Source: Octopus sinensis (Eukaryota). From it: DNA of 64,000 nucleotides. The notes under the pieces were generated by a model, which was not told where the DNA came from, searched no databases, and worked only from the letters and a program-made list of their open reading frames with translations. Within the stretch, counting starts at the first letter, position 1; every line of letters begins with the position of its first letter. Where the stretch lies: contig NC_043003.1 of NCBI RefSeq assembly GCF_006345805.1, positions 113,584,001 to 113,648,000 on the forward strand. Direction: 5' to 3'. This document shows, piece by piece, positions 8,594 through 59,635 of the stretch. The position numbers and the translations under genes are program-made.

Positions 8594-8629
<36 letters not shown>

Positions 8630-9149: not shown

Positions 9150-9208
<59 letters not shown>

Positions 9209-23529: not shown

Positions 23530-24880
23530 TACTGAGTGGGGCAGAGAGGACAAATGTTTTTGAAATGGCTGTTACTCAGTCCCATTAGGAGGGATATAGG
23601 TCTGACAGGTGCCATTTGGTCCGTGGTGTCACAGTACTTTTTTGTCTTTTCAGGTGAAGCCATAGCACCGTGGACAACAGAGCATCATGTGTTTGCCTAC
23701 AACAGTTACATGAAGAATATCGAGTCTGTCACTGCAGTTCAGCATGAGTTTCAGCGCCACTTCAACATTCACCAAAATCAGGCTGCTCCCACCTGTAACA
23801 CAAATCTTATGTTGGCAGAATGCACTTCGTACATGAGGTACACAAAGTATACTAATGAATAAGAGACTGGTGGGGGTGCCATGAATGGATACAGACCCTG
23901 GAAAATGTGGAACATGTCAGACAAGCTTTGATACGGAGTCCAAATCGCTCTGCTCGGAGGCATTCCACTGAACTTGGCATTGGTAATCAATCAATAAGGT
24001 GTATTTTGCATGAAGACCCATACAAATTGGTCATTGGGCAACAGTTGAAACCATGGGACTATGCACAGCAGCTTAACTTCGCACGTTAGATGGAAGCAAT
24101 TTTTGAGCCAAATGACAACCGCATTTTGTTAATGAGTGATGAAGATCATTTTCATCTCAATGGCATGGGCATGGTGAATCAGAACTGTCATTATTGGGTT
24201 CTTGAAAATCTGAGAGAACTGCACGAAAGACCACTGCACAACCCAAAAGTGACAGTCTGGTATGCTGTTGGAAAAGCTGTTGTCATTGGTCCTTACTTTT
24301 TGAGGACAATAATGGAAATGCTGTTACTGTGAAATCCGAGCACTACATTAAGATGATAAACAACTTCTTTGTGCCTGAATTATGACAGAAATGCATGCCT
24401 ATTCAGTGTGTGTGGTTTCAACAGGATGGGGTGATGGCACACACAGCCAGAGCATCAATGGGTGTTCTTTGCCCTCTCTTCAATGACTGCCTCATTTCCA
24501 GGTTTGCTGACATTCCTTGACCCCCTCAGTCACCTGATTTGTCCATGTGTGATTGTTCTTGTGGGAAAACCTCAAGGTGTGTGTATATGTGCATAAGCCC
24601 CATACATTGGATAATTTGAAGGAAGCTATTCACATGGGGGTTACCCAAATCAGCAGAGCAATGCTGGAAAGAGTGGAGGCCAGCTTCCAAGAACACCTTC
24701 AGAAATGCATCAAAGAAAACAGGCACCACATGATGGAGGTTGTTTTCCACATTTGATTTTGACAAATGCTAATCCAATACACATTGTTTGCAGCTAAGAT
24801 TAATGATTTTGAGAATTTTTCAAAAATGTCTGTCCCATCATTTGCACAAAAATGTCTGTCTCTCATTTGCACAAGGAAAT
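23530..24880 (+). pseudogene. Degenerate Tc1/mariner transposase, DD41D (rosa/Visitor-type)
   Basis: Fragments with LMSDEDHFHLNG, WFQQDG and PP.SPDLSMCD, 41 residues between the 2nd and 3rd Asp; stops and frameshifts present. Ends approximate. Confidence 0.85.
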
Positions 24881-27884: not shown

Positions 27885-28280
27885 TCTTTTACTCTTTTAC
27901 TTGTTTCAGTCATGTGACTGCAGCCATGCTGGAGCACCGCCTTTATTCGATCAAATCGACCCCAGGACTTATTCATTGTAAGCCTAGTACTTATTTTATT
28001 GGTCTCTTTTTTCTGAACCGCTAAGTTACAGGGACGTAAACACACCAGCATCGGTTGTCAAGCGATGTTGGGGGGGACAAACACAGACACGCACATACAT
28101 ATATATATATACACATATATACGACAGGCTTCTTTCAGTTTCCGTCTACTAAATCCACTCACAAGGCTTTAGGTCGGCCCGAGGCTATAGTAGAAGACAC
28201 TTACCCAAGATGCCACGCAGTGGGACTGAACCCGGAACCATGTGGTTCGTAAGCAAACTACTTACCACACAGCCACTCAT
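27885..28280 (-). mobile_element. SINE family A copy
   Basis: Reverse complement of the 8987-9417 pattern. Confidence 0.85.
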
Positions 28281-28800: not shown

Positions 28801-29150
28801 CGCAGGAGTGGCTATGTGGTAAGTAGCTTGCTAACCAACCACATGGTTCCGGGTTCAGTCCCACTGTGTGGCACCTTGGGCAAGTGTCTTCTGCTATAGC
28901 CCCAGGCCGACCAATGCCTTGTGAGTGGATTTTGTAGACGGAAACTGAAAGAAGCCCGTCATATATATGTATATATATATAAGTGTGTGTGTATATGTTT
29001 GTGTGTCTGTGTTTGTCCCCCTAGCATTGCTTGACATTGCTGGTGTGTTTACGTCTCCGTCACTTAGCGGTTCGGCAAAAGAGACCGAAAGAATAAGTAC
29101 TGAGCTTACAAAGAATAAGTCCCGGGGTCGATAAGTAAAAGAGTAAAGAG
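28801..29150 (+). mobile_element. SINE family A copy
   Basis: Same head, body and tail, with a deletion near the tail. Confidence 0.85.
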
Positions 29151-31136: not shown

Positions 31137-31773
31137 ACAGGGTGTCCCACAATTAACTATTTCAGTGAAATTGATCAATCTTTTAAAAACTCACTTTTAT
31201 TTATGCTTATCATGTTTAATGTGTTAAAGGCGTATAAATTTTTAACTTTGTTTATAATTTTAAATTATGTTTGTAATTTTATAATTTATAAATTTATAAT
31301 TTTATATGTTTATAATTAATTTTGTAATTTTCTTATCATTCCTGTTGGATGCCATTTATCTGTCCATGACAGCTTTTTTTCAATTTGGATGCAATTATTT
31401 TCCCTACCTCCATCCCCAGGATGGAGCAACAAGTTCAGCTGGACTTAAAGAATGCATTCAGTTAGCAGTGCAGGAAATAACCACTGAAATGCTCCAAAAT
31501 GCATTTCACAATCCTTAGAATAGATTTGAAATTTGCAGAAATACAGACGGAGCACAGGTTGAAAATCTTTTAATCAAATTTTGATACAAGATTTATAAAT
31601 CTTTACTCTTTTACTTTAGTCACCTTTAGTCGAGCAAATCAACCCCAGGACTTATTCTTTGTAAGCCTAGTACTTATTCTATCAGTCTCTTTTGCCGAAC
31701 CACTAAGTTAGAGACATGTACACACCAGTATCGGTTGTCAAGCAATGTTGGGGGGACAAACACAGACACACAA

Positions 31774-31814
<41 letters not shown>

Positions 31815-32107
31815 CATATACACGACAGGCTTCTTTCAGTCTCCATCTACCAAATCCACTCATAAGGCTTTGGTCGGCCCAAGGCTATAGTAGAAGACAC
31901 TCGCCCAAAGTGCCATGCAGTGGGACTGAACATAGAACCATGTGGTCGGTAAGCAAGCTATTTACCACACAGCCACTCCTACGCCTATTTGTTTTGATAT
32001 CATAATTAAGTAATAATTATAAAATTCTGTCAGTTTTATTTTTTTTTTGCTTTTAATTTGCCTGATTTCATTAGTTAATTAGTAGTTAATTCTGGAATAC
32101 CCTGCAT
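31137..32107 (+). mobile_element. Mariner-like relic (transposase C-terminus) interrupted by a SINE
   Basis: Starts tacagggtgtccc, encodes LKECIQLAVQEITTEMLQNAF...DGAQVENLL, ends near gaataccctgca. Confidence 0.5.
31600..31983 (-). mobile_element. SINE family A copy inserted in a mariner-like relic
   Basis: Reverse complement of the family A pattern. Confidence 0.8.
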
Positions 32108-35410: not shown

Positions 35411-36419
35411 TGTATGTATGTATGTACGTACGTACGTATGTATTAGGACATGTGATAGTCTCAAAAGCACAAGTAAATTGTACTCCAATTCAGTCAGTAG
35501 ATGATTAATGTTGTATCTAACAAAATGAAGATACTTTTAAACTTTCACAGGATATTTATAACAGTTATTGAATTTTCTAACAATAACCAACTGAAAATAT
35601 TCTTGGTTATTTCAATTCAATTAATTATAAATAAGATAACTACTTTTTATGTTATTGATTTTAAAAAATGAAGTAAAATATTAGCTGCTGGGCTTTATAA
35701 TTAGCATCAACCATTGATGTGAGTCAATCTCAACAAGCTAAATGAAGACACTATATAAGAATCAAATAAGTTTGATGGGGTCATTTCATGTAGAAAATTG
35801 GCCCAAATACAACTGAGGCATCAAAAATTTAGAGAGACCCTGGAAATTAGGTTTCTAAAAATGCATGAAATACTTGTTATGTTGGTATAATCACAGCATT
35901 TGACTGCAACATTAATTCGGTTTTTTTTTTTTTTTTTTCTTAATGAAGTTTCATATTAATTAAACTTGGATGTTTTCAAGAACAGAAATCAGTTGGAGAT
36001 GGAAAAAAAAAAAAACTTTGAATTAAAGGAAAATATAAAGCAGAAATTGAAATTCATATTCAAGGTTTAATAAAAGGAAACTGAAATTTGAATTGCTAAA
36101 AATTTTACTTTCCCTCCAATCACCATTTCTTAAAAAAATTTAGAATATTTTTTTTAATTTATGGAGTTACAAAGTTTTATCAATTAGAAATTAAAAAAAA
36201 AAAAAAAAGGAAAAACAAACAAAAACAACATTTTAATCAAAAATACCCATCCCTGAATTGCATGCATGTAGGACAACAGAAAAAAAAGCATTTTTTTAGA
36301 TATTAAAATTCCATTGGCGGCTATTTGGTTAAATAACTTTATCTTTACATCATCAAAATGGTATTTTTTGTAAAACAAACAACAAAAATAAGAGGGTGGA
36401 GAAATGTCTTTCAACTTAC

Positions 36420-36524: not shown

Positions 36525-38165
36525 CTAAAAAACAATGACAAGATGAGAGACAATTGAAATTTCATTTGATGGTCAAAGAAAACAAAATAATAATTTTGTG
36601 TGTCAACATTAATATTCTATTTATCATCATTCATTGCTGTTACCAAACCAAACACATCAACAAAGATTACACAACAAATAAATTTCTACAACAATAATTT
36701 CTTACATGCCTGAAGCACAACTGGTAAATCTTTTATTAACCCTTGTGGGATCCAATTAGTTGACCCTGGCTTGGCCGGGAATTTTACTGGCTCCCTTATT
36801 TCAATAATAACAATAATAAGGAAAAGGTGGAGAAGGATTTTTTCGGCTGGTATAACACCTCATGTTTATAGCTGAATGGTAGAGTCATTCCAGTTAAAGG
36901 AGATTAATAACTGCCGTTTATTTCCTTACCAATATTATATTATCTTTTTAAGTTATTCTGGGGTCTACTACAGACTGTGCAACATTAATAGTGTGTGATA
37001 AAATTAAAGCTTAACCTAAAACATGTCTAACATTGCTACCATAACTACTAAAAACATGAGATTTTCTCTCCCTCACCCTCTCTTTCCATATCTGCCCATC
37101 TCCCTAGAGAGAGATTTTTTTATCAATCGAAAGTTGAAAATTCTCTTTCTTGCTGTTGAGTTTTCATTAGGCTAATGGCTTTTCTAATCATTAAGGGTAC
37201 AATTTCAATTGTGTAAATAATTTTGGGGGATTAATATATCAAGTTACCCTGCCTTTTGCATGTTCTTTAGGTAGAAGGGACTCTGAGAAATTGTCCAATG
37301 CCTTTTTTTAAACTGATACTGTTTAATGTGTAGCCAGTAATGGCCACATATTTAAGGTCCAAAGAAGAAATGGCCCATTTAAATTTTCCTGTTACAGATG
37401 ACATTCCCAGAAATATTCTAGTTCTTGGTTTTGGTGTCTGTCAATTCACATTCACACAAGTATATCTGTTGTTTATAAATTTCCTCTCAAAAGTAATTAG
37501 CAGTGAGAATATCTCACTATCACTGACTTTATAAATCTCGTCTAAAACTACATTTGGATGTCCAGAGCTAGACATTTCCCCACCCTTGCCCTTTTCCTTC
37601 TACCACAAGCAAAAGGCAAGGAAACAATGGTGGAAGGTTTGTTGTCAAACAACAAATGTCTACAATGTAACACTACTGTCAGTCAATAACGCTTCTGTGT
37701 TTAGGACATTATTGGATTTTATGATTGCTGCTATTTATAAACAGACCTGACAACTGCCATAGTGAAGGCGCTAGACTCCTCCTAACCAGTTGAGACTGTG
37801 ATGCTGTTTCAACTTTCGGTTGAAACAGAGTTCATTTTTTTTTTATACCTCCAATGCACTTTTGGAAAATACATAAAGTCACAACATCACATTTATTTCT
37901 CCCGAAATTTGACTATAAATAGCAAAGCAATTTATTTTTTAATGGGTACAGCTTAGCTACAGTTGGTTTCTTTTTTTTTATTTCTATTTTTTCTTTAAGA
38001 ATTTATTTCTTGTCTGGAAGAATTAACAAATTACGGAGATGTACATGCATAGCAAGTGATTTGATCTGAGATCGTGTGCTGAAACGAAAACAATTGCAGC
38101 GTGGAAGGTGTTTATAAGCCATTTAAGAAACACACAAAAGCCGTTCGATTCACTTCAACATTTAA

Positions 38166-38226
38166 GTTTAATTTGTCAAAATATTTTCGTCGCTATAAGA
38201 CCGCGACCTCTTCACTGACAAAAAAC
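38166..38226 (-). ncRNA. Mirror copy of HHR-3 with core GUGAAGA
   Basis: Minus strand reads tttgtca-GTGAAGA-g-gtcgc...gcgac-GAAA-ATAT-TT-tgacaaa. G3 opposite G8 predicts an inactive core. Confidence 0.5.
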
Positions 38227-38233
38227 CAGCATG

Positions 38234-38294
38234 GTTTTTTGTCAGTGAACAGGTCGCGGTCTTAAAGTGACGAAAATATTTTGACAAATTAAAC
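38234..38294 (+). ncRNA. Hammerhead-like motif with variant core GUGAACA (HHR-3, right arm)
   Basis: Stem I tttgtca/tgacaaa (7 bp, extendable past a 2-nt bulge); GTGAACA at 38245-38251; stem II gtcgc/gtgac after one extra G; GAAA at 38272-38275; ATAT; TT. Confidence 0.55.
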
Positions 38295-41200
38295 TTAAAT
38301 GTTGAAGTGAATCGAACGGCTTTTGCGTGTTTCTAGAATTAACAAAATAATAATAATAATGATGATGATGATGATGATGATGATAACAAAATTGATCCTG
38401 TTGATTTCACATAAATTATGCCAAAGATATTGCAGGCAGTGTTATGTAACTGTAGCTTGAAATCAATCTAAATGTTATTTGCGGAGAAAGGTTCAAGAGT
38501 ATAAATAACATTTACCTAGAAGCTGTGATTTCCAAGTGTGCATGTGTGTGTGTGGCATGAGAGTGTGTGTGTGTGTGCATGTATGTGTATGTATGTGTAT
38601 GCGCATATGCATGCATATGTGCGTGCTATTTGTGTGTAGTGTTTGTGAAAGAACAGACACAGGTATGTGTGTGTGTGTGTGTTGACGTCTGCATACAGAA
38701 TCTAGGAACAGCACCAGTTTTCACAAACAATAGATTGCAGTTCCTGAATTTTATTTGATTTGATGCTATGTTAGGTATTTATTATTAATGCTATTGTTGT
38801 TGTTGTTGTTATCGTATTTGTTACTGTTGCCATTGTTCTCCAGCAAGATTCTACAATTAATCTATCTTTGTGTTTTCTGATTAAATTATTGTATTCTATA
38901 ATTAAATCAACAATGCATTCTGTAATTGTGTTAGTATCCATTTCTATAATAAAATATTACAATATTAAAACTAAATATATCAATAAATAAACAAATAAAA
39001 GAAAAAAAAATAAGTTTCATAATTAAATTTTAAAAGAAATAAAACAGTAATATCTAATTAAGCAACCACAAGATTTTATAAACAAATAAAATAGCAAATT
39101 TAATGTGTATGTGTGTGCAAGTGGCTATGTTCATCTGCCTCTACGCTTGCATATATATATATAAAGGATTCTGCATGTCTGTGTGCGTGCTTGTATGTCT
39201 ATATGAATATATATGTATACATACGTATGTATGTATAGATAGGTAGACAGATACACAAATGTGTATATATGTGTGTATATATATGTGTGTGTGTGTGTGT
39301 GTATATATATGTGTGCCATATCCAGGCCCTTAACTCCTTCACAGAATCACAAAGGTGCTTTCATAACATATGGTGTATCTTTGGACCTTTTAGACATAGT
39401 AGTACCTATCCCACTCTTTGTCTGACCACAGTCCTTTTCTTCCAGGGAAGAGAGACAGAAAGAATTAAAGAGAAAGGAGAATGTATGTGTGTGTGTGTTT
39501 GTGTATGTGTGTGTGCATAACAGAGCCTCACACTGTAAGAACAGACAGACATGGTTGATGACATCTATTTACTGCTTGTCGTAAATATCAAATTTAACAC
39601 TAAAAATTGTTGTAAATCTCTCCAAAATGATTTATTTCTTGAATTGTCAGTGTTTGATATCAGAGATCATGTAAGAATATGACTGGTATAACAAAAATGC
39701 AAAATAAAAAAAAAACATTAAAAAACACAAAATAAAAACATTATCAAAATTTGGGAATTAGGAAATATCTTGCTTAGAATCTAAGAAAATTAGCAGACAA
39801 AATCTTCTTTTATTTCAAATCAATTTACATGGAGACTATTATGCAATTATCCTAACAACTTGCATATAGATTAATTAACTCTTGGCATCTCTTAAAACTG
39901 AACCAGTAAAGTTCCAAGCAAGTGATGCAGTTGTTACTTAGAGATTTGCCAAGTTCAATGAAGATGACAAATCCTTTATCAGTTTTGGCAAATATTTAGT
40001 CAATCAAAGCACAGGGGCCACACAATGCCTTCAATAACTTGGACTTAGTTTCAGTCCCAGTTGGTATTCCAGGCATTGTCAATCTGCATGTTTTGGGACT
40101 TGGGCATACGGAATAAGGTTAAATATATTTTATAGCTGCTTATAATAATACAGTTTGGGGAAGATATATTGGTAAAACTAAAGTCCAAATATAAATGGTA
40201 TTGCATTAAAATAAGACACACCATAATATTATCCCATAACAATATCCCCCATCCCATAATTCATCAGTAGGAATCATTGCTTTAGAGTAGAGTGCTGGTA
40301 TAAAACTAAGCAAAAGACTGAATCCACGAACCACAAGATTTAGGTCAAGAGTACTTAGAGACTAGAGTACTAAGAGACTAGAGTACTAAGAGATATCTTG
40401 TTTCATATTAAGATGTAAGAGATCAAGCTCAGATATCACCACAATGAACTACGATTTTATCAAATAAAATATATACAGAGTGTGATGAGTAAATTGTCGC
40501 CATTTATATATTTTTAATTTCCCCCATGTACATTGTTTGTTTTTGATTTTGTTGACTACACAGTAAAGTAGGGTCAGTTGGGCACTGTCTGTGGAAAAAA
40601 CAGCACCCCGACGCAATTCACTCTGTCAAAAATTTGGAACTATAACAGCCTTTGCAAATTAGGGAGGAATGGATAGAAAAATGCACTGGGCATAAATTCT
40701 TAAATTCGTTCATCAAAACAACCCAATCTTGCATTATAAAATAGGCGAAGAAGGGTGCATGGAAGCATATACATCCTCCTTATCTTCATCATTGCCAGCA
40801 TTTCAGCTACTCATCCGGTCACTAGTGCCACCCTCATTTACACACCATCATCATTATCATCACAATCAATCACAGCAACTCCTTAACTTTCATACTTTAC
40901 TGTATAGACTTTTATGTTGCTTTTTTATTTTCATTTATCATCATCATCATCCTTATTATTATTATTAATAGTAGTAGTAGTAGTAATAGTAGCAGCAGCA
41001 GCAGCAGTAGTAGTTTTAATGTTAGTGTGGTTAAGCTCCAGTTAACAAAGATAGGAAGAAAAAAAAAAAGGAAAATATTACAATTAACATAATTACTACC
41101 AAATTATCAACACCACCACTACAACTACTACTATTACTTCTGCTATCATCACCATCACCACAACCACCACCACCAACAACAACAAGAACATTTTAATCTA

Positions 41201-42548
41201 AATTACACCAACTCCAGCGTCATAACGTCCTTGTTCGTTGCAAAGTGGCTACAATTTTCGAAAGAACCAAACACACACATCTAAAGTGCCCATAATTACA
41301 AAATGACCAAAATAACTAGCAAGCCTCTACCACTGTGATTAAAAGCTAACATGTTTAATATCTCTGATAGTTTGATGCTATAATTAAGGCATGTAATTTG
41401 CTATGATTACTGAGGGGGTATTTTTTTTTAAGGATATTTAAAAAACGTTTTTTTTTTTTCTATGCCTTCTTAAATTTCCATCAGATGAACAAGTGTTTTT
41501 GCAATAAAACGCATGCTAAATGAATATTTTGTGTATGTATGGGAGGCGGCGGGGTGACTTGAGATAGAGAAACAACTGAAAACAGTAAAATAATAACAAA
41601 AAAAGAATGACTATTTTAACTGGTGCGATTGGAGGAGACAGCAGCTGCTGAATGTTAAATGCTCGAGTAATGATAATGTTATTAATACTGACATCTGAAA
41701 ACAAAAAAAAAACAGAAAAAAAGGTAAAAAAAAAAAAAAAAGAACATATCGTAGTGCAAGAGGCAAGTTAACGGTAAGGTGGCACAGTGACATGGTTTTG
41801 CACTACTGAAGCCGTTGGGAAAGGTGCAAATATCACAACATCCATTTCCTGGATCCTGTGACATTTGCCAAAACACAAGACTTTGTGCCTGGTTAAAAGA
41901 TTATAATTTCTTTTGACTATCCTCCTCAAGGCTAAATTGTTAATGGCTGGTTGCACAGTCAACTGGATCAACCTAGTATTTATTTAAATCAAACTGGAAG
42001 GATGAAAGACAAAGTGACATGTTCACTTAGGATATACCATGTTGAAACTAAATGATATAACGTAAACATTCCAGCAATCTACAGCTTCATCTTCTCCCCC
42101 ACCCCTCCCCCCTCCACCAGTAATAATCATTAATTCCAACTCATGCATAGAACCCACATAATTTGGTGGGGAAGTGAGGGTGGGCGTATAATTAATTGGA
42201 TTAGCACATAACCAATGTTTATTTTTGTCAACCCTGGAGAATTGTGAAGTTAAAATCAACACGTTGAGTTATTCAGTGTGAAACAACTAAAATAATGAAA
42301 AGGAAAGCATTCTCACACTCAGATGTTTCTTCCAGCTCCATCCATGACAACCACTAATAATGAATCTTGGTAAAATACAAACACAAACTTACAAGCTTAT
42401 ATATACGTGTAATGACACACATATACAGGCAAATACAGAAGCACACATGCACAGACACAGAGTAGAGTTGCTCCTTCATTTCACACTGATAAGAAATGAC
42501 ACTTGTTAACTCTAACACACACAAGGTACAATAGCAGACCGTACTTAC

Positions 42549-42669
42549 CTTTTACATTGGTGACAAATGCCACCTTTTGTGGTTTGTTGTTGTCATTGTA
42601 GATGGCAAAGTACCACACTCCTGCAGTCAAGTACTGAATGATAGCTGTGTTCTTGCCTGGGCTATCTCT
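42549..42669 (-). CDS. TENM: Teneurin exon RDSPGKNTAIIQYLTAGVWYFAIYNDNNKPQKVAFVTNVK(G)
   Basis: tttacaacag|AGA...AAA G|gtaagt, 121 nt, phase 0-1. Carries the teneurin IQYL..G.W..A.YND motif. Not shown in the ORF track. Confidence 0.93.
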
Positions 42670-42945
42670 CTGTTGTAAAGACCAAAAACATAAACATCAT
42701 TAACAATAACATTGCTACCACCATAGTGCTTGTCATCCTTATCTTTTCTTATTGGCAATATTAATTTTCCAGTAAATATTTTCATTGTAAAGTATATTTG
42801 CATCTAAATATGGCTAACCACTGAAGGTGGATATTACTGTAGCTTGTAGCCCAGGAGAACATCTTCTCTAGCTGCCTATTGACACACTTTCTGTGCCCTA
42901 TCGGTATTTGCAAAGGAAGGTCATCCTTCCTTCATCAACCTAAGT

Positions 42946-42995
42946 GATACGCACGGACTGCAGTTTCTGGGTACTAACCCGTCATCAGTGCACGA
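42946..42995 (-). ncRNA. Mirror copy of HHR-2 on the teneurin sense strand
   Basis: Minus strand reads gtgca-CTGATGA-cgggttagtaccca-GAAAC-TGCA-GTC-cgtgcg; stem I is imperfect. Confidence 0.55.
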
Positions 42996-43010
42996 CAATC
43001 ACCGGTTTTC

Positions 43011-43062
43011 GATGGTGTGCTGATGACGGGTCAATACCCAGAAACTGCAGTCCGTGCGTATC
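43011..43062 (+). ncRNA. Decayed type I minimal hammerhead motif (HHR-2, right arm)
   Basis: CTGATGA at 43020-43026; gggt-caat-accc stem II with a C/A mismatch at its base; GAAAC-TGCA-GTC at 43041-43052; stem I pairs only through several G-U wobbles. Confidence 0.6.
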
Positions 43063-43999
43063 ACTTCCTTTGCAAATACCGATAGGGCACAGAAAGTTTG
43101 TCGATAGCCAGCTGGAGAAGATGTTCTCCTGGGGCTACAAGCTACAGTAACATCCACCCTTAGTGGTTAGCCATATTTAGATGGCAAATATACTTCACAT
43201 TGTCGTGCAGTTACTGTCTATACCTCATTCAGAGATTTATTATTTCCATTGAGGCTTTTGTTCTTAACATTATAATCCTCATCATAATTTTAATTTTGCT
43301 TATCAACATCAGCAGCAATGTTGTAAACACTGATATCATCGCAAAACTCATTAATGACATTGTCATTTATAGCATCTTTATCAGTAAAGTTCTGTCGTCA
43401 TTAACTGATCTCATGCTTATCATCATCCCCTTACAAATCAACCAGCCTAATTTCTATAAAAAGTCCTAATAATATGTACAGTTATGTTTGTTCCTTCTCG
43501 AGCCATGCCTGGCTCATAAGGGCCGGTTTCCTGGTTTCTTGGTGTATAGGTTCCCCACCTGGATGGGACACTGGTCCATTGCAGGTGAGCTGCAAGATGC
43601 AGGAGGGAAGAGTGAGAGGTGGCGAATGAGTCAGCAGAAGTTTTGCTATTAGCTTCTGCCGGAGCCGCATGGAGCTTAGGTGTTTTGCTCATAAACACAC
43701 ACATCGTCCGGTCTGAGATTCGAACCCATGATCCCTCGAGCGCGAGTCAGCTGCTCTAACCACTAGGCCATGTGCCTCCACCAATATATACAGTAGTTGA
43801 GGCTATATCAATGCAGGTTGTTGTTTACCCAAAAACTGTGAAAGAAAATATTGAATGAGAGAGATGTCAACCATCTCAACAAACTGTTCTGATAGCCTGT
43901 GTGTGTGCGTGTGTGTGTGCATTCATGTATTTTTAGTAATCGTGGAAGCATATATAGTGGCACCATTTGTAAGGAGTGTATATGATGTATACAGGATGT

Positions 44000-44137
44000 C
44001 CTCTCTCTCTAACCGCTCAGTCGAAGTCGACTCTTGGTCACTCTTTGGATCAGTGTCCTCCAGTCAGTTCTATCCTGGGCCGCTTCCTTCAGACTGGCCA
44101 TGTCCATTCCGGTATCACTCCTGATGGTGTCAAGCCA
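44000..44137 (-). mobile_element. Short 5'-truncated copy of the same RTE LINE with 12-bp TSD
   Basis: Homologous to 4410-4535; TATACAGGATGT at 43988-43999 and 44138-44149. Confidence 0.85.
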
Positions 44138-45036
44138 TATACAGGATGTATATGATGTAAATGAGAGTGTTAAGACAAAAGGAACTTATGATAAAAGGAA
44201 GTTAGTCTTTATTGTTGAATAGCTTTGGTCAATTTTACTTGAGAAGGTGTTGACTGAACACTTTGAATCTTATTATTGAAACCAACTTGGTTCATATTAC
44301 CAACCCATAAGAAACTGTTTCTAATAATCAGCACATATTTAAATGACAAGCGTTAACAAAACCTTATTATTACATTAATATTAAAAATAATGCAAGATTT
44401 TAGAAATTAAAAATGCATCATAGTTTCATGTAATGCTTTTTTTTTTTTGTTTTTGTATTATAAGTTCAGCTGAATAAATACAAAGAAAAACAAAACAGTT
44501 CCACATATTTTCTTGAAGCCCTTAAAGTGCTTCAGTCCATTCCGAACATGAAGAATGGAAACACATGCAATGTTATAAGAGTTTGTAATTAGCGACAGGA
44601 TAGGTGTTTCAGGGACCATTTCCAGGTGTTGAGGTAAATAATTGTTAGCTGGTTGACTGCATTAAGTATCTGTGTCCGATATACAACCAAGTGAAGATGA
44701 ATTCAACAAGTAATGCATTGATAGAAAAACACTACATCAACTCAACCACATTGTTTCTAAAATGGAACTAAACACCAACAGGAAAAGAAAACTGTGATTT
44801 ACAAAGAAAAAAAAGCAAAGGTAATATTATCAGAATCGTTCCAGTTTTAGAATATGTACTTGCAGAGAGTGCAGGCACAAGTATGGCTGTGTGGTAAGAA
44901 GCTTGCTTACCAACCACATGGTTCGGGGTTCAGTCCCACTGCGTGGCATCTTGGGCAAGTGTCTTCTACTATAGCCTCGGGCCGACCAAAGCCTTGTGAG
45001 TGGATTTGGCAGACAGAAACTGAAAGAAGCCCGTCG

Positions 45037-45070
<34 letters not shown>

Positions 45071-45120
45071 TTAGTGAATTGAAGAAATGGAGTTGAACGA
45101 AGATTGAACAGAAATCGTTT

Positions 45121-45213
45121 TATTTCATTCTACACGTGTTTCGAAAGGCACAATTTACCAAATTCCGATTGAATAATGAGACCATATTGTGTCTTTCTCT
45201 TCAGGAAGAAATA
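45121..45213 (-). ncRNA. Mirror copy of HHR-1 on the teneurin sense strand
   Basis: Exact reverse complement of 45335-45427; predicted cleavage 3' of position 45131 on the minus strand. Confidence 0.85.
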
Positions 45214-45334
45214 GGAAATCCGTTGGAAAAAACAAAAACAGAACAGAGGCGGAGCAAAACAATTGAACTAGGAGCCTAGTTCAATTTGTTTTGCTCCGCC
45301 TCTGTTCTGTTTTTGTTTTTTCCAACGGATTTCC

Positions 45335-45427
45335 TATTTCTTCCTGAAGAGAAAGACACAATATGGTCTCATTATTCAATCGGAATTTGGTAAATTGTGC
45401 CTTTCGAAACACGTGTAGAATGAAATA
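45335..45427 (+). ncRNA. Type I minimal hammerhead ribozyme motif (HHR-1, right arm of fold-back)
   Basis: Stem I tatttcttc/gaa-t-gaaata; CTGAAGA at 45344-45350; stem II gaaag-a-cacaat...attgtg-c-ctttc; GAAA at 45406-45409; C-ACGT-G; GTA triplet at 45415-45417. All core nucleotides present. Confidence 0.85.
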
Positions 45428-45918
45428 AAATGATTTCTGTTCAATCTTCGTTCAACTCCATTTCTTCAATTCACTAATAATATTAAAATTCAATTATCCG
45501 CACCAACGCACGGTTGCAACACCATATGGTTGTACCTCCAACCGTGCTGTCTTCTGCTGTGATTTTTGCTACCAAGGTATCGGTTAAACTTTTGATTAAT
45601 CTGCAACAAGATTATTCATCTTTCTATTTCACATAAATTATATATATATATATGTATGTGTGTGTGTATGTTTGTGTGTCTGTGTTTGTCCCCCCCAACA
45701 TCGCTTGACAACTGATGCTGGTGTGTTTATGTCCCCATAACTTAGCGGTTCGGCAAAAGAGACCAATAGAATAAGTCCTGGGGTCAATTTGCTCGACTAA
45801 AGGCAGTGCTCCAGCATAGCCACAGTCAAATGACTGAAACAAGTAAAAGAAAAATAGCCTCAGACCAAGTAAAGCCTTGCGAGAGGACTTGGTAGATGGA
45901 AACTGAAAGAAGCACATC

Positions 45919-45949
<31 letters not shown>

Positions 45950-46332
45950 ATATATATACATACATACATAGATAGATATGTATGTATATATTTGTGTGTG
46001 TGCATGTGTTTGTCTCCCCACCATTGCCTGAAAACCGATGTTGGTATGTTTACATCCCTATAACATAGTAGATTGGCAAAAGAGACCGACAAGTACTAGG
46101 CTTACAAAGAATAAGTCCTGGGGTCAATTTCATTGACTTAAAAAAACCCTTTAAGGCAGTGCTCCAGCATGGCTGCAATCAAATGAGTGAAACAAGTAGA
46201 AGAATAAAAGAAACGACGGTGTAACTTAGCTTAAATGATAAGCAGAAGCAAACTGGACTGGGTTCGCTTCTGCATCAACTTTTAAAATATGGAAAATGAA
46301 ACAAACTGAAAGAAGTTCTCAAAATAACATAC

Positions 46333-46592
46333 CCAAGATAGTGACCTTTTCACCAGTCTCGAGCCACTGAAAATTTCAAAAAACTCAAATTGGACATGTG
46401 TTGGCGGTAGGTTTTTCCGTCCGTATATACCTAGTACAGCATGATCAGGGATGGTAAAGTTGATCTTGATAAAACCTGGGTCAAGTTGTTCAAACTTTGA
46501 CTGCCAAAACGATTTGGGTGGAATCTTCAGTTGTTGGAGTTGGCCAAGATGCACAATTGAAGGGCTTGGCAATGCAGTTGTAGATGAGGAAC
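46333..46592 (-). CDS. TENM: Teneurin exon, N-terminal part of the pre-EGF extracellular beta-sandwich region
   Basis: tttaaacag|GT TCC...TGG|gtatgt, 260 nt, phase 1-0. Encodes IPPKSFWQSKF...NFTIPDHAVLGIYGRKNLPPTHVQFEF, matching the teneurin FW....GIYGR...PPTH.Q..F motif. Confidence 0.93.
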
Positions 46593-48638: not shown

Positions 48639-50721
48639 CAGCGGTAGTAGTTGTCGTAGTTGTTGTTGTTACATAAGCACAAGGTGCCAATTTGTGGGAA
48701 GGAAGCAATTATAACCATTAGTAATGGACTGGTATATTATTTTATCAACTTGGAAAGAGAAAAAGCCAAATCTCTCACATTGGGATTTCGATTTAGAAAG
48801 TAAAAAAGCGAGAAGCAGAAAAAGGCTGCGAGGCTCCAATACTTTCTGTTTCTATTACCACAATACAGACAACGACAATCAAGACTTACTACTACTACCA
48901 CCACCACCACCACCACAAAGCCATCTCAATTCTTTTACACTGATAATATTCTGAAGAATAGCAACAATGTTACAATATCAAATTTGAAGTCAAAACAAAT
49001 CTGTAGTTTTATGCCTATTCAAAAGAAATCTTTGTAGTTGTTGTTGTTGTTGTTATTATTATTATTATTATTATTGTTATTATTATCATTATCATCACCA
49101 TTCCTATAACTACAGTTGAGCAAATGACAAAAACAAAGGAAGAGACAGATTCTTTACACCCCAAAACCTCTCTCTGGTTTCAATCATCGTATTTTGGCAA
49201 TGCCTCAATAAAAAGGTAACAATGACAAAATCCCTACCTGCTTAAGAAAAACAGCATCACCATCATCATTATTATTATCATCATCATTTCTATATTTATA
49301 ATTATTTAATTACTAATCAATAAAACTATCTCTTTCAACACAAGCAAATTGTATGTCTTTAAAATGTGTCTTTATCGAGTTTTTACCTTTACATCAATAA
49401 TGATGGGAAAGAAAAGGAACACAAGAGAAAATTAAATATCTACACACACACACACACACAAAGAAAGGGAAACTAGAAGTGTAACACAACACCATCCCAA
49501 AACAAACTTCATATGTTATTATTTTTTGTTTTTGTTGCTTTTTCCTAATATACTTCCACATATCATCACATTTGATAACTCTTGGTTGTTTTGTTGTTGT
49601 TGTTTGTACAGTTGTAATGTATTCAAGGCAATTATTTAAAGCTGTGTAATATAGTTTTTGCTAATAATAAGTCTGCTAACATTTTAACTTCAATAGTCAG
49701 CCAAATGGCATTGCCAAATTTAAAAGTTCCTTCTTTCCACAAACCCAACCCATTAACAGCAAACAATTTGGGTTTTTTTTCAAAAAAAAAAAAAAAAACA
49801 ACAAGAAAAAAACTAGTAGCTGGTGATTTGAAAGAAAAGTGAGGGGTGTGTGTGTATGTGTATGTTGACATATGCATGGGCAAGAAGATAGATATGTGAA
49901 CTCAAAGCAGAGAATAAGAAGGAAACAGAATTAAGAAGACATTGCTAAACACACATGCGCGCACACACACACACACATTTATACATACATTCATATAAAT
50001 ATAGATGTATGAATATATATGCATATATGAATGTATACAGACATACATTCATATATATATGTCTACATATATACATACATACATATATATATGTCTACAT
50101 ATATACATACATACATATATATATGTATATATGCATATATATGTGTGAATATATATATATATATATGTGGAGGCACAATGGCCCACTGGTTAGGGCAGCG
50201 GACTCACAGTCGTAGGATCGCAGTTTCGATTCCCATACCGGGCGTTGTGAGTGTTTATTGAGTGAAAACACCTAAAAGCTCCACGAGGCTCGGGTAGGGG
50301 GTGGTAATCCCTGCTGTACTCTTTCACCACTCTTTCTTTCACTCTTTCTTCTGTTGGCCTGCTCACTTAGCTTGCGGGGTGGCGTCATTCGAAGGCTAAA
50401 ACAATGCGAAGTGCATTGTAACCAGCGATGTGTAACAACATTCTGATGGTCTGGTCGGTAACGTGATCACGTGATATATATATATATACGTATGTATATA
50501 AATATATATCACTAGCCCTACACATTTTTCTATTTTCTCTCCCTGTTCATTTCTGTGTTCCTTTCTGTCGAAGACCATAGGCTCAAAATGTGTAAAATAC
50601 TTTCTCACTTCCCGAGTGTTAAACTAATACACCTGTTTGTTGTTTACACACCCATCATCGTCTTTTGTTTTTTGTTTTTTTGTAAATTCACACTATATGT
50701 ATATATGTGTGTGTGTGTATG

Positions 50722-50774
<53 letters not shown>

Positions 50775-50789
50775 GTATATATATAAAAG

Positions 50790-51950
50790 GAGAATATTCT
50801 ACTTCAAAACAATGGTGTCAGATCACAAATTGTTGATGCAACACTTAAAGAGATCTTTTCTTTGCAACCATGTGGAAGTAGTGGAGTTGACAACCAATCT
50901 AAGACTTCTTACAGAAGGTCATTCTGATGAAAGAGAGTTTGCTAATTGCCTTCTTGATGTAGGAAATGGAAACCTGTCTGTTGAACAAAGCCTAGGTGCA
51001 TTCGAAGCCAAACTACCCAATGACTCTCGCCTTGAAAGTGGTACTCTTTCAGATCAATGTGATTTTGTATATGCTGACCTAACTTCACAAACCCTGTGTG
51101 GCTTGCAAATAGAACCATCGTTACTCCAACAAATGAAGCAGCAGAATTTGTGAATGATTTTCTATTGACCAGGATGCCTGGGGAGCTAAAAACATACAGA
51201 AGCTCAGATGCAGTTGATAATGACCCAATCGAGTTCATCAACAAACTCACACCATCAGGGTTTCCACCACACATTCTCAAACTGAAAGAAAAACGATGCA
51301 TGATGCTTCTGGGAAACTTAGATGCTACTGTATCCTCATCATCATCATTTAACGTCCGTTTACCATGCCGGCATGAATTGGATGGTTTGACTGGGGACTG
51401 GCAAGCCAGGAGGCCGCACCAGGCCCCAGTCTAATCTGGCAATGTTTCTACAGCTGGATGCCCCTCCTAATACTAACCACTCCGAGAGTGTAGTGGGTGC
51501 TTTTTACATGCCGCTGGCACGGGAGCCAATTGAGCAGCACTGGCATTGGCCACAACCACAATTTCCATTTGATTGTGATTTGATTTTGATTGTGACATTG
51601 CAAGAGCACACACCACATCATTGTCAGAGCATGTTACTGAGGCTGAGGTTGCTTCTGGTCCTTTATGCAGGATCAACTCAGCTAATCCCAAGAATACAAC
51701 ATGTATCACAAGAAATGGAATTTCCATTTCCATTTACATGCAAGCAATTTCTTGTGAAGTCAGCTTTTAAACAAATTGGACAATATCTTCCAACACAATT
51801 CTTCTCACATACTCAACTGTATACTGCATTATCTTATGTTCGAAAGAAGGCTAATGCAAAAATATCGGCTGAGAGAAAAGGAAACGGTGTGATTACCGAC
51901 AATGTCTCTACAAGGAGATACTACTTTAAAGCAAAATATGCTTTTTAGCA
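50790..51950 (+). pseudogene. Helitron PIF1-like helicase relic, split by a family E retroposon (51332-51590)
   Basis: LTTNLRL...FANCLLDVGNG, RTIVTPTNEAAEFVN, EFINKLTPSGFPPHILKLK, LIPRI...FPFTCKQF and FSHTQLYTALS match Helitron helicase motifs; frameshifted. Confidence 0.85.
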
Positions 51951-55263: not shown

Positions 55264-56154
55264 TGAGGTGTAGTTAAAATGTATCCGATCATAATGTGTT
55301 TTATGCAGAAAATAATAATGTGTGAGCAAGATCCACATGGGTGGTATTAGGTGGCTGCATCCTTCATGAGCATGCATGAAAATATTTATGTCTGAAGGTT
55401 GTGCCATTCACCCGCAGTGATGTGTTGAGTACAGACGTGAAGAGTGTGCTGTACAATTTTTGTTTTTGAGTCAAGATGACTAAATGATTTCAGCAAAGAT
55501 ACTGTATCAAATTCTGCCAAAAACTTTGTGATATGCAAGGCCAGACTATTGAGAAGATTCAGAAGGCCTTTGGAGATGATGTTATGGGAAAAACACCAAT
55601 AAAAGAGTGCTACAACTGGTTCAAATATGGTCGCACCTCAGTGGATAGTGTGCTATAAATATACACCACAAGGTCAGACAATTAACAAAGAATACTACCT
55701 GGGGGTTCTTTGTCCTCTTCATGAGGCTGTGCAGTGAAAATAACCCAACATGTGGGCAGCAAGGGATTGGAAACTCCACCATGACAAGGCACTCACTTAT
55801 TCCACCCACATCGTCCAAGCATTCCTCATCAAGCAAAATACACACCACTTGCCTGTCAGGCTTTCTACTCCCCAGACTTGGCTCTGTGCGGCTTTTGGCT
55901 ATTCTCAAAGCTCAAAAATCACTCAAAGGGAGAAGATTTGAGTCAACAGACGATGTTAAGCAAAATTCAACGGCACAGCTCTACAACATCCCAAAAAGGA
56001 ATTTCCAGAAATGTTTCCAGAAGTGGTAGGAACACTGGCAGAAGTGTGTAGACTCCCAAGGCAAATACTTTGAAGGAGACTAAATCAAAATGCTGAGTTT
56101 TTTAATATTACTTGATTTTTGGCCAAAAGTCGGATACTTCTTGCCTACACCTTT
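55264..56154 (+). mobile_element. Internally deleted mariner element
   Basis: TIRs gaggtgtagttaaaatgtatccga / tcggatacttcttgcctacacct with TA flanks; QRYCIKFCQKL...WFKYGRTSVDS, WKLHHDKA and LKGRRFESTDDVK...FQKW...GKYFEGD. Confidence 0.85.
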
Positions 56155-58820: not shown

Positions 58821-59432
58821 AAATGTATGTACATTAAGGTGCCATATAGTAGAGGTAAATTCTCTGCAAGCCAAGTAAGCTGTGCAAGTTTCAATTCCCA
58901 ACAGAGGAAGATAATAAATATGATACCCGTTATCACCCACTTTCCTTCCTCAAAAGGGTGAAGCTCAATGCTGATTTGTTCTTGTCTGTTCTTTGGAATT
59001 TGTTTTGAAAACTGCTTACCTAAAATCTACCTGACTCATTTGCTGAGGACATGCTACATGAAGATGAAAGCTTTGTTCAGGTATTACACAATAAAACATG
59101 AAGGGGCACAAGACATTTTCATCCAGAATATATAGGTGTGTGTGTGTGTTTTATACATATATGTGAGAAGGGAGGTAAAGAAACAAGGAGAGTTTTCAAA
59201 AAAACTGTTGCCAAGGGTAACGGCTAGAAATTTTACATGAAACCATAATTCTGTAATTTTGTGGTAATTTTAGTTGACCAACCAAATCCTGCCACACAAC
59301 TCATAACATAATAAATAATTAATCTCTCAATCACCAAACTAAGCCAAACAGTGAATTAGTATTACTAAAGTTTATCAATGAAGCAGTCATTACATATGTT
59401 ACATATAATGATTTTCGTTCAGACACAGATAG

Positions 59433-59602
59433 GCACAGGAGTGGCTGTGTGGTAAGTAGCTTGCTAACCAACCACATGGTTCCGGGTTCAGTCCCACTGC
59501 GTGGCATCTTGGGCAAGTGTCTTCTGCTATAGCCCCGGGCTGACCAATGCCTTGTCAGTGCCTTGTAGACGGAAACTGAAAGAAGCCTGTCGTATATATG
59601 TG

Positions 59603-59635
<33 letters not shown>

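What the first reader, a model, noticed from the sequence alone, without database searches (positions are those of the whole stretch)
38019..45630. Three unrelated fold-back retroelements, each carrying a pair of minimal hammerhead ribozymes, clustered in teneurin introns
Seen: three palindromes (38126-38334, 42783-43202, 45063-45485) with no obvious shared sequence except one layout. In each arm: stem I - core - stem II - GAAA - self-complementary stem III (AAUAUU, ACUGCAGU, ACACGUGU) - UH - stem I, pointing outward. Each has a one-sided extension. One has a perfect 12-bp TSD, one a possible 11-bp TSD, and one sits in a (TA)n target. Established: minimal type I hammerheads with palindromic stem III loops that work as dimers are encoded in Penelope-like element pLTRs (Cervera and De la Pena 2014), and PLE insertions often carry inverted terminal segments. 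Inference: a recurrent class of short non-autonomous PLE-derived hairpin/ribozyme retroposons, from several families and of different ages (arm identity about 99%, 96% and 90%). I do not know whether it has been described in cephalopods.
Basis: partly seen in the sequence, partly recalled or inferred. Interest (0 to 1): 0.9.

Follow-up and report, generated by a model that had tools for sequence, protein, structure and literature searches.

The report
Truncated Penelope-like fold-back insertions with hammerheads
Three short hairpin-shaped insertions in introns of an octopus-like teneurin gene each carry a hammerhead-ribozyme motif in both arms, and they look like ordinary, heavily truncated copies of Penelope-like retrotransposons rather than a new kind of element.

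Summary
There are three unrelated near-perfect palindromes: E1 38126-38334, E2 42788-43199 and E3 45063-45485. Each has a one-sided extension of 95, 41 or 152 nt. E1 has a perfect 12-bp TSD and E2 a 10/11 TSD. E3 sits in a (TA)n tract, and five paralogous empty sites in the window confirm it as an insertion.

Type I hammerhead motifs with a palindromic helix III point outward in every arm. E2 and E3 have canonical cores: 4 hits against 0.007 expected per shuffled window, and none elsewhere. E1 has G at the invariant C3, and E2 has a C.A mismatch at 10.1/11.1. None reaches Rfam's threshold.

The anatomy matches published hallmarks of Penelope-like element (PLE) insertion:
- strong 5' truncation;
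- an adjacent inverted copy;
- a one-sided tail;
- a hammerhead near the 3' end;
- microsatellite targets;
- no poly(A).

Hammerhead pairs on opposite strands 100-700 bp apart were already attributed to truncated PLEs in 2014. I could not test homology to a full PLE, because no cephalopod DNA is reachable with these tools. A dedicated non-autonomous family therefore stays open but is not needed.

At these loci the ribozymes lie on opposite strands and are buried in 100-210 bp hairpins, so they are probably inert. This is a new member of a known kind, of low to moderate interest.

The parts
38019..38030 (.). E1 target-site duplication, left copy (AGAATTAACAAA)
   Evidence: Perfect 12/12 match to 38335-38346. 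Random position pairs at this spacing match at 3.7e-4.
38031..38125 (-). E1 one-sided extension ('tail', 95 nt). It lies downstream of the left-arm hammerhead and inside the TSD.
   Evidence: It lies between the TSD and the palindrome and has no counterpart on the right side.
38126..38229 (-). E1 left arm
   Evidence: 96.1% identical to the reverse complement of 38232-38334.
38172..38222 (-). E1 left-arm hammerhead-like motif. Helix I is 38216-38222 / 38172-38178. The core is GUGAAGA at 38209-38215 (G at position 3). GAAA plus the palindrome AAUAUU is at 38180-38188.
   Evidence: Relaxed-core descriptor and coordinates. The minimum-free-energy fold is the hammerhead secondary structure. No Rfam hit in the whole-region scans; only the right arm was also scanned on its own.
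38232..38334 (+). E1 right arm
38238..38288 (+). E1 right-arm hammerhead-like motif. The core is GUGAACA at 38245-38251, which gives G3 with C8, a swapped Watson-Crick pair. H17 is at 38281.
38335..38346 (.). E1 target-site duplication, right copy
42777..42787 (.). E2 possible TSD, left copy (TATTTTCATTG)
   Evidence: 10/11 match to 43241-43251, and it abuts the palindrome. Weak evidence.
42788..43003 (-). E2 left arm. It contains an extra 25-nt segment at about 42920-42944 that forms a small hairpin of its own.
42944..42998 (-). E2 left-arm hammerhead. The core is CUGAUGA at 42982-42988. Helix II is 4 bp with loop UAGU. GAAA plus ACUGCAGU is at 42957-42967. H17 is C.
   Evidence: Canonical descriptor hit and coordinates.
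43005..43199 (+). E2 right arm
43010..43064 (+). E2 right-arm hammerhead. The core is at 43020-43026. Helix II has loop CAAU. GAAA plus ACUGCAGU is at 43041-43051. H17 is at 43052.
   Evidence: In cofolding, two copies form the 8-bp helix III. No Rfam hit.
43200..43240 (+). E2 one-sided extension ('tail', 41 nt)
   Evidence: It lies between the end of the palindrome and the candidate TSD. Its size matches the published 30-40 bp PLE tail.
43241..43251 (.). E2 possible TSD, right copy (TATTTCCATTG)
45036..45062 (.). (TA)n target, left part. It is the internal microsatellite of a SINE-like repeat.
45063..45273 (-). E3 left arm
   Evidence: 99.5% identical to the reverse complement of 45275-45485.
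45121..45213 (-). E3 left-arm hammerhead. The core is CUGAAGA at 45198-45204. Helix II closes on G10.1-C11.1 and carries a 45-nt insert. GAAA plus ACACGUGU is at 45132-45142. H17 is A.
45275..45485 (+). E3 right arm
45335..45427 (+). E3 right-arm hammerhead. Helix I is 45335-45343 / 45418-45427. The core is at 45344-45350. H17 is at 45417.
   Evidence: Rfam Hammerhead_1 matches the full model at 14.8 bits, below the gathering score of 34. The dimer forms the 8-bp helix III.
45486..45637 (+). E3 one-sided extension (152 nt). It contains a 9-bp-stem hairpin, GCACGGUUG...CAACCGUGC.
   Evidence: It belongs to the insertion: in five paralogous copies of the host repeat the flanking halves are only 21-52 nt apart.
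45638..45659 (.). (TA)n(TG)n target, right part
42549..42669 (-). Teneurin exon. It separates the E1 intron from the E2/E3 intron. E2 begins 118 nt upstream of its 3' splice site.
   Evidence: It matches teneurin-3 residues 169-199. The splice sites read ...acag|AGAG and AAAG|gtaagt.
46282..46572 (-). ORF containing the upstream teneurin exon (galactose-binding-like domain); the exon's splice sites were not mapped
   Evidence: Pfam GBD_Tenm3 at 98 bits. PDB teneurin-3 at E=2.5e-14.

Best explanation
E1, E2 and E3 are three independent, heavily 5'-truncated insertions of hammerhead-bearing Penelope-like retroelements (PLEs). They come from three unrelated families and differ in age. Each is in the inverted-repeat-plus-tail configuration that PLE integration typically leaves.

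Proposed steps (inferred from published PLE biochemistry, not shown here):
1. The GIY-YIG endonuclease cuts the target with a stagger. This produces the TSD, or cuts within (TA)n.
2. Reverse transcription starts inside the 3' region of the element RNA and copies the last 100-210 nt. That stretch includes the pLTR hammerhead, which lies 53-147 nt from the start site.
3. A second, inverted copy of the same stretch is made. This happens either by snap-back or template switching onto the new cDNA, or by priming from the other cut strand.
4. One copy starts further downstream on the template than the other. That difference gives the one-sided tail.

The hammerheads are cargo from the parent pLTR. 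In these copies they sit on opposite strands, so they cannot form the dimeric helix III in cis. In the teneurin pre-mRNA each element folds into a 100-210 bp near-perfect hairpin. They are therefore most likely catalytically silent at these loci. The practical effect of the elements is to place long double-stranded RNA in the introns.
For: Real insertions:
- E1 has a perfect 12-bp TSD that encloses tail plus palindrome.
- E3 interrupts the (TA)n of a repeat. Five other copies in the window keep the two halves 21-52 nt apart, against 624 nt here.

Hammerheads of the PLE type:
- They are type I with a palindromic helix III. The core is canonical in E2 and E3: 4 hits against 0.007 expected, and none outside the palindromes.
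- E1 has the extra nucleotide between A9 and G10.1-C11.1 that Cervera and de la Pena list as a PLE-hammerhead trait.
- The minimum-free-energy folds and dimer cofolds agree with the motif.

Insertion anatomy matches the published hallmarks (PMC8557442):
- high 5' truncation;
- an inverted 5'-truncated copy forming inverted repeats;
- a tail often at one end only (E2: 41 nt against the published 30-40);
- the hammerhead in the pLTR near the 3' end;
- (TA)n targets.

Further support:
- No poly(A) or simple-repeat tail is present at the 3' ends.
- In vitro, the PLE protein PAc cleaves and extends both target strands and uses two internal RT start sites, which explains the tail (PMC11167929).
- Dual min-hammerheads 100-700 bp apart on opposite strands were reported as probable truncated PLEs (PMC4209133).
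- Penelope families are numerous in octopus genomes (PMC13282606 and PMC8967140).
- The hairpin folds have energies of -174, -322 and -390 kcal/mol.
Against: - There is no sequence homology to any PLE. The window holds no RT or GIY-YIG ORF, and no cephalopod DNA could be reached.
- The tails of E1 (95 nt) and E3 (152 nt) are longer than the published 30-40 bp.
- No hammerhead reaches Rfam's gathering score.
- E1 lacks C3, and E2 has a C.A mismatch at 10.1/11.1.
- The arms of each element end at the same template position, with centres of only 2-4 nt in E1 and E3. Two independent truncated cDNAs would rarely do that, so a snap-back step or a defined RNA 5' end has to be added to the model.
- In E1 and E2 the axis lies only 5-7 nt upstream of helix I. 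Random truncation does not predict this.
Confidence: 0.68

Rival explanations
1. The elements are dedicated short non-autonomous retroposons (hairpin 'retrozyme-like' or SINE-like RNAs of about 200-360 nt that begin just upstream of a hammerhead). PLE reverse transcriptase mobilises them in trans, and the fold-back arises at the defined 5' end of the short RNA.
For: - The palindrome axis lies 7 nt (E1) and about 5 nt (E2) upstream of hammerhead helix I.
- The arms of each element end at the same template position, as expected for a defined RNA 5' end.
- Three unrelated sequences share one layout.
- Non-autonomous derivatives of PLE pLTRs exist in animals, as non-LTR retrozymes (bioRxiv 10.64898/2026.07.22.740005; PMC7761336).
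Against: - The E3 axis is 60 nt upstream of helix I.
- A fourth fold-back with the same layout (8323-8592) has no hammerhead at all.
- Snap-back synthesis gives equal arms without a defined 5' end.
- No copy-number data exist and there are no other copies in the window.
- Known animal retrozymes are tandem direct repeats, and none are present here.
Confidence: 0.22
2. The elements are miniature inverted-repeat (fold-back) DNA transposons. The hammerhead-like motifs are chance or convergent features of AT-rich hairpins.
For: - The elements are palindromes of 200-420 bp with TSD-like repeats.
- Two of four fold-backs in the window sit in TA-rich targets, as Stowaway-type MITEs do.
Against: - The TSD or empty-site boundaries enclose a one-sided unique extension of 41-152 nt. 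One terminus therefore has no terminal inverted repeat.
- A 12-bp TSD is unusual for cut-and-paste families (my own knowledge).
- Canonical hammerhead motifs occur only in these arms: 4 against 0.007 expected.
Confidence: 0.04
3. The palindromes are assembly or sequencing fold-back artefacts, or local inverted duplications unrelated to transposition.
For: - The E3 arms are 99.5% identical with a centre of a few nucleotides.
- Complex PLE insertions are said to trouble assemblies.
Against: - The arms of E1 and E2 have diverged (96% and 94%, with an indel).
- The TSD and the paralogous empty sites delimit discrete insertions that include a non-duplicated tail.
- The three sequences are unrelated yet share the same ribozyme layout.
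Confidence: 0.03

Closest known systems
5'-truncated Penelope-like element insertions with an adjacent inverted copy and a one-sided tail (Evgen'ev and Arkhipova 2005; Craig et al. 2021, PMC8557442)
   Same: - Inverted repeat made of two 5'-truncated copies with their 3' ends outward.
- An extension at one end only.
- A hammerhead near the 3' end.
- Variable TSD or a (TA)n target.
- No poly(A).
   Different: - Only 100-210 nt per arm is retained and no ORF is left.
- The tails of E1 and E3 are 95 and 152 nt, not 30-40.
- The arms end at the same position, so the spacer is only 2-20 nt.
- Homology to a PLE is untested.
Dual min-hammerheads on opposite strands, 100-700 bp apart, in Schistosoma mansoni (Cervera and de la Pena 2014, PMC4209133)
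   Same: - Pairs of PLE-type type I hammerheads on opposite strands at short distance.
- They were interpreted as truncated PLEs.
- Natural covariation at the 3-8 core pair (U3-A8) was reported there. The G3-C8 pair in the E1 right arm is comparable.
   Different: - The host here is a cephalopod-like genome.
- The helix III palindromes here are 6-8 nt long, not the helix-III-less minimal form.
- The E3 helix II carries a 45-nt insert.
Metazoan non-LTR retrozymes (Cervera and de la Pena 2020; review PMC7761336; Li et al. 2026 preprint)
   Same: - Short, non-coding repeats that carry a type I hammerhead.
- They are thought to depend on PLE machinery and to derive from pLTRs.
   Different: - Retrozymes are head-to-tail tandem repeats that yield circular RNAs through two same-strand hammerheads.
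- Here the copies are inverted and no tandem units exist.
Sm-alpha / Sj-alpha SINE-like hammerhead retroposons of schistosomes
   Same: Short dispersed retroposons that carry a type I hammerhead near one end.
   Different: Those are single direct units with a promoter followed by the hammerhead (PMC6765202). Here each insertion is a fold-back with a tail.

Membership tests
Hammerhead ribozyme, type I (Rfam RF00163) | Conserved core C3-U4-G5-A6-N7-G8-A9, G12-A13-A14, and U16.1-H17 | tested here: met
   This row covers E2 and E3 only. Both arms of each have CUGAUGA or CUGAAGA, GAAA, and UC or UA. There are 4 hits against 0.007 per shuffled window.
Hammerhead ribozyme, type I (Rfam RF00163) | The same conserved core, in E1 | tested here: not met
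   Position 3 is G in both arms (GUGAAGA and GUGAACA). The right arm has a swapped G3-C8 pair and the left arm has G3/G8.
Hammerhead ribozyme, type I (Rfam RF00163) | Three helices around the core, open at helix I | tested here: met
   - Helix I is 7-9 bp.
- Helix II is 4-5 bp (preceded by a C.A mismatch in E2).
- Helix III is a 6-8 nt palindrome.
- The minimum-free-energy fold of the E1 arms is the hammerhead fold, and the E2 and E3 dimers form an 8-bp helix III.
Hammerhead ribozyme, type I (Rfam RF00163) | Score at or above Rfam's gathering threshold (34 bits) | tested here: not met
   There are no gathering hits in the window. An E3 arm scores 14.8 bits. The right arms of E2 and E1, scanned on their own, give no hit at E<=10, and the whole-region scan gives none in either arm.
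Hammerhead ribozyme, type I (Rfam RF00163) | Self-cleavage at H17 | not testable with these tools
   This needs in vitro transcription of monomeric and dimeric constructs.
PLE-type hammerhead (Cervera and de la Pena 2014) | Palindromic positions 15.2-16.2 / loop 3, allowing a dimeric helix III | tested here: met
   AAUAUU, ACUGCAGU and ACACGUGU. Dimer cofolds support this. The feature is listed in PMC4209133.
PLE-type hammerhead (Cervera and de la Pena 2014) | Unpaired nucleotide between A9 and 10.1, plus a G10.1-C11.1 pair | tested here: inconclusive
   - E1 has both (an extra G, then G-C).
- E2 has an extra C, but it is opposed by an unpaired A (C.A).
- E3 has G10.1-C11.1 without the extra nucleotide.
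These are read; the feature is.
Penelope-like element insertion | ORF encoding a reverse transcriptase plus a GIY-YIG endonuclease | tested here: not met
   There is no such ORF in the elements, and I saw none by eye among the window's ORFs; only ten chosen ORFs were scanned against Pfam, so a decayed fragment could have been missed. Heavily 5'-truncated copies are not expected to keep one.
Penelope-like element insertion | Inverted 5'-truncated copy adjacent to the insertion, forming inverted repeats | tested here: met
   The feature is from PMC8557442.
Penelope-like element insertion | Extension (tail) of 30-40 bp present at one end only | tested here: inconclusive
   All three have a one-sided extension. 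It is 41 nt in E2, which fits, but 95 nt in E1 and 152 nt in E3.
Penelope-like element insertion | Variable TSD or microsatellite ((TA)n) target, and no poly(A) tail | tested here: met
   - E1 has a 12-bp TSD and E2 a 10/11 TSD.
- E3 lies in (TA)n, with paralogous empty sites.
- The 3' ends read ...CTCCGTAA...GAGATTTAT and ...CATAAATT.
Penelope-like element insertion | Sequence homology of the arms to the pLTR / 3' end of a full-length PLE in the same genome | not testable with these tools
   No cephalopod genome is searchable. The exact-protein look-up, the protein homology search and two metagenome scans all returned nothing.
Metazoan non-LTR retrozyme | Head-to-tail tandem repeats, each with a same-strand hammerhead | tested here: not met
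   Tandem Repeats Finder reports only microsatellites in 37500-46500. The hammerhead copies are inverted.
MITE / fold-back DNA transposon | Terminal inverted repeats at both ends, directly abutting a fixed-length TSD | tested here: not met
   The TSD (E1) and the empty-site boundaries (E3) enclose a unique one-sided extension, so one end has no inverted repeat.

The most novel reading that the evidence does not exclude
The fold-back axis sits 5-7 nt upstream of hammerhead helix I in two of the three elements, and both arms of every element end at the same template nucleotide. The most novel reading is that cephalopod genomes hold distinct short RNAs that begin at a pLTR hammerhead. PLE reverse transcriptase would copy them to their 5' end and then snap back. 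That would define a separate class of hairpin retroposon from several PLE lineages, one that seeds long intronic double-stranded RNA, a potential ADAR substrate, in neural genes such as teneurin.
Probability: 0.15. Interest if true: 0.55.

Novelty: new member of a known kind. Interest (0 to 1): 0.25.

Why it matters
Taken as ordinary PLE debris, the finding mainly improves annotation. Repeat pipelines are likely to label such fold-backs as unknown repeats, MITEs or microRNA-like hairpins. Here Rfam microRNA models score them up to 74.6 bits, below threshold.

Two points could matter more.
- The elements place 100-210 bp near-perfect hairpins in introns of a neural adhesion gene, one of them 118 nt from a 3' splice site. 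Octopus is reported to have an unusually high density of long double-stranded RNA loci and the strongest hyper-editing signal among the animals surveyed (PMC5625713). PLE fold-backs may contribute to that pool.
- Equal-length arms with a one-sided tail are a natural record of how PLE integration resolves. A genome-wide census of axis positions could distinguish snap-back synthesis from two-strand priming, which is still open for this retroelement class.

Tried and rejected
- Rfam at gathering level on the whole window found nothing. Permissive scans of the region returned only sub-threshold microRNA-like matches to the hairpins. One weak Hammerhead_1 match was found.
- My first strict descriptor, with no mismatch or bulge allowed, found nothing. 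E2 has a closing C.A in helix II and E3 has a bulge in helix I. I replaced it with a descriptor that tolerates one irregularity per helix and tested that against shuffles.
- I tried four ways to obtain other copies from outside the window. All came back empty:
  - exact look-up of ten ORFs from the elements;
  - a protein homology search with the 55-aa open frame of the E3 arm;
  - two metagenome scans with 23-24-nt hammerhead segments of E3 and E2.
- I looked for a PLE-like ORF start at helix II running to the end of the element, as described for the anole PLE. None of the three has one.
I replaced this with ORF fragments.
- I considered and rejected MITE and assembly-artefact readings (see the rival explanations).

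Full report
**What is there**

The region holds three near-perfect palindromes. Global alignment of the arms gives:

| Element | Arms | Identity | Centre |
|---|---|---|---|
| E1 | 38126-38229 / 38232-38334 | 96.1% (4 mismatches) | 3 nt |
| E2 | 42788-43003 / 43005-43199 | 93.6%, excluding a 25-nt extra segment in the left arm | diverged |
| E3 | 45063-45273 / 45275-45485 | 99.5% | a few nt |

A sensitive BLAST of arms, extensions and flanks against the whole window finds no similarity between the three and no further copies. A scan of all 64 kb for inverted repeats finds one more non-microsatellite fold-back at about 8419-8592. Everything else is microsatellite.

**Hammerhead motifs**

I wrote a descriptor for a type I hammerhead. 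It requires helix I, CUGANGA, helix II, GAAA, a self-complementary helix III that begins with A15.1 and ends with U16.1, a non-G at position 17, and the return strand of helix I. One irregularity per helix is allowed.

- In the whole window it hits exactly four places: the two arms of E2 and the two arms of E3, each reading outward.
- In 300 dinucleotide-preserving shuffles the mean is 0.007 hits per window, and only 2 shuffles had any hit.
- The arms are copies of each other, so this counts as two independent events. Both fall inside palindromes that cover under 2% of the window.
- E3's hammerhead is not minimal. Helix II closes with G10.1-C11.1 but carries a 45-nt insert. Rfam Hammerhead_1 aligns to the full model at only 14.8 bits, against a gathering score of 34.
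- E2 has a 4-bp helix II preceded by a C.A mismatch at 10.1/11.1, and gets no Rfam hit.
- E1 is found only when positions 3 and 8 are freed. Its core is GUGAAGA in the left arm and GUGAACA in the right arm. About 0.15 such relaxed hits are expected per window, and one unrelated hit does occur at 35489-35614. E1 alone is therefore weak evidence. Its credibility comes from sitting in a palindrome with the same layout as the other two.
- E1 does show two traits that Cervera and de la Pena list for PLE hammerheads: an extra nucleotide between A9 and 10.1, and a G10.1-C11.1 pair.
- ViennaRNA's minimum-free-energy fold of both E1 arms is the hammerhead fold. Cofolding two copies of E2 or E3 builds the 8-bp intermolecular helix III expected of dimeric hammerheads.
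- Nothing in the window reaches any Rfam gathering score.

**Ends of the insertions**

- **E1.** It is flanked by a perfect 12-bp direct repeat, AGAATTAACAAA, at 38019-38030 and 38335-38346. Random position pairs at that spacing match 12/12 at a rate of 3.7e-4. The repeat encloses the palindrome plus 95 unique nucleotides on the left (38031-38125).
- **E2.** It has a 10/11 repeat at 42777-42787 and 43241-43251. The left copy abuts the palindrome, and 41 unique nucleotides lie on the right (43200-43240). This repeat is only suggestive on its own.
- **E3.** It lies in a (TA)n tract that is the internal microsatellite of a SINE-like repeat. Five other copies of that repeat in the window have their two halves 21-52 nt apart, joined by (TA)n(TG)n. 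In the E3-bearing copy the halves are 624 nt apart.
- These copies are paralogous empty sites. They show that the palindrome and its 152-nt right-hand extension (45486-45637) arrived together as one insertion of about 575 bp.
- In all three elements the extension lies downstream of the hammerhead of the adjacent arm, and no 3' end carries poly(A) or a simple-repeat tail.

**Host gene**

- The ORF at 46282-46572 (minus strand) matches the teneurin galactose-binding-like domain (Pfam 98 bits; PDB teneurin-3 E=2.5e-14).
- A 121-nt exon at 42549-42669 matches teneurin-3 residues 169-199 and has consensus splice sites.
- EGF-type exons follow at lower coordinates.
- E2 and E3 therefore lie in one intron and E1 in the next. 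E2 begins 118 nt upstream of a 3' splice site.

**What it most likely is**

Published descriptions of PLE insertions list these features (PMC8557442):
- a high degree of 5' truncation;
- an inverted 5'-truncated copy immediately adjacent, which forms inverted repeats;
- a 30-40 bp tail often present at one end only;
- hammerheads in the pseudo-LTR near the 3' end;
- a bias towards microsatellite targets such as (TA)n.

In vitro, a purified PLE protein cleaves and extends both target strands. It starts reverse transcription at two internal sites, and the spacing between them corresponds to the tail (PMC11167929). Cervera and de la Pena reported that PLE hammerheads have a palindromic helix III suited to dimers. 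They also found that most genomic copies are single motifs from truncated PLEs, and that some occur as pairs 100-700 bp apart on opposite strands (PMC4209133). Penelope families are numerous in octopus genomes.

The three elements fit this description point by point. I therefore read them as three independent, strongly truncated PLE insertions from different families and of different ages. What is shown here is that they are insertions, that they carry hammerhead motifs, and that their layout equals the PLE layout. What is inferred is the identity of the mobilising enzyme and the integration steps.

**What does not fit neatly**

- The tails of E1 and E3 are two to four times longer than the published tail.
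- Both arms of each element stop at the same template position. Two independent truncated cDNAs would rarely do that. Either snap-back or template switching onto the nascent cDNA occurred, or the RNA had a defined 5' end.
- In E1 and E2 that position lies only 7 and about 5 nt upstream of helix I. In E3 it is 60 nt upstream, and the fourth fold-back has no hammerhead at all.
- With four cases this cannot separate random truncation from a preferred end.

**Function at these loci**

The two hammerheads of a fold-back lie on opposite strands. One transcript therefore carries one ribozyme and one antisense copy, and a dimer cannot form in cis. The whole elements fold into hairpins of -174, -322 and -390 kcal/mol in the sense of the pre-mRNA, which would out-compete the ribozyme fold. 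The motifs are probably inert relics here. The likely consequence of the elements is long intronic double-stranded RNA. That is of some interest because octopus is reported to have an unusually high density of such loci and very strong hyper-editing (PMC5625713). This link is an inference and was not tested.

**Limits**

No cephalopod DNA is reachable with these tools. An exact look-up of ten ORFs, a protein homology search and two metagenome scans found nothing. Copy number, 5'-end distributions and homology to a coding PLE all remain untested. The window itself has no PLE ORF.

**Verdict**

The interpretation as PLE-derived is well supported by anatomy, but this is an already described kind of insertion. 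It is a new member of a known kind, with interest of about 0.25.

Noticed in passing
window 8284-8634: A fourth fold-back has the same layout. It reads: (TA)n 8284-8321, about 97 unique nt (8323-8418), 85-nt arms at 8419-8503 / 8508-8592, then (TA)n 8596-8634. It has no CUGANGA on either strand and no hammerhead layout. It could be a PLE fold-back truncated downstream of the ribozyme, or a hammerhead-less (Naiad-type) PLE remnant.
   Followed up: partly
window 38209-38215 and 38245-38251: The E1 arms differ at only four positions. One is core position 8: G in the left arm and C in the right arm, with G at position 3 in both. The right arm therefore has a swapped G3-C8 Watson-Crick pair. Another difference is a C-to-U change in helix II that keeps a G.U pair. 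Natural U3-A8 covariation is known in schistosome PLE hammerheads.
   Followed up: partly
window 38230, 43004, 45274: The palindrome axes lie 7 nt (E1), about 5 nt (E2) and 60 nt (E3) upstream of hammerhead helix I. The two very short distances are unexplained by random 5' truncation.
   Followed up: partly
window 42920-42944: The E2 left arm has an extra 25 nt that is absent from the right arm. It forms its own small hairpin (aaggaagg-tcat-ccttcctt) and is probably a secondary templated insertion.
   Followed up: no
window 8997-9411, 27893-28275, 28809-29102, 31666-31975, 44884-45035 with 45660-45850, 59431-59813: A SINE-like repeat with an internal (TA)n(TG)n microsatellite is present in at least six copies on both strands. 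The copy at 44.9-45.9 kb is the one E3 split.
   Followed up: partly
window 42669-42788: E2, a hairpin of about 200 bp, starts only 118 nt upstream of the 3' splice site of the 121-nt teneurin exon at 42549-42669. That is close to where a branch point would be expected.
   Followed up: no
window 50707-51434 (+): Two overlapping ORFs match PIF1-like helicase domains (Pfam PF05970 and PF21530). This looks like a decayed Helitron fragment.
   Followed up: partly
window 4406-4762 (-), 43850-44220, 24090-24329 (+), 55721-56029 (+): Other transposon debris, judged by eye. There are two copies of a LINE-like C-terminal tail (motif GRPRTRWLD / IRSDTGMD...DRTDWR) and mariner-like transposase fragments. 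No Pfam hit was obtained for the ones I scanned.
   Followed up: partly
window 45185-45363, 42939-43066, 38185-38275: Permissive Rfam scans match the fold-backs to plant and animal microRNA precursor models (MIR847 74.6 bits, MIR4387 56.2 bits), all below gathering scores. These are generic hairpin matches, and automated annotation could mislabel the elements because of them.
   Followed up: yes
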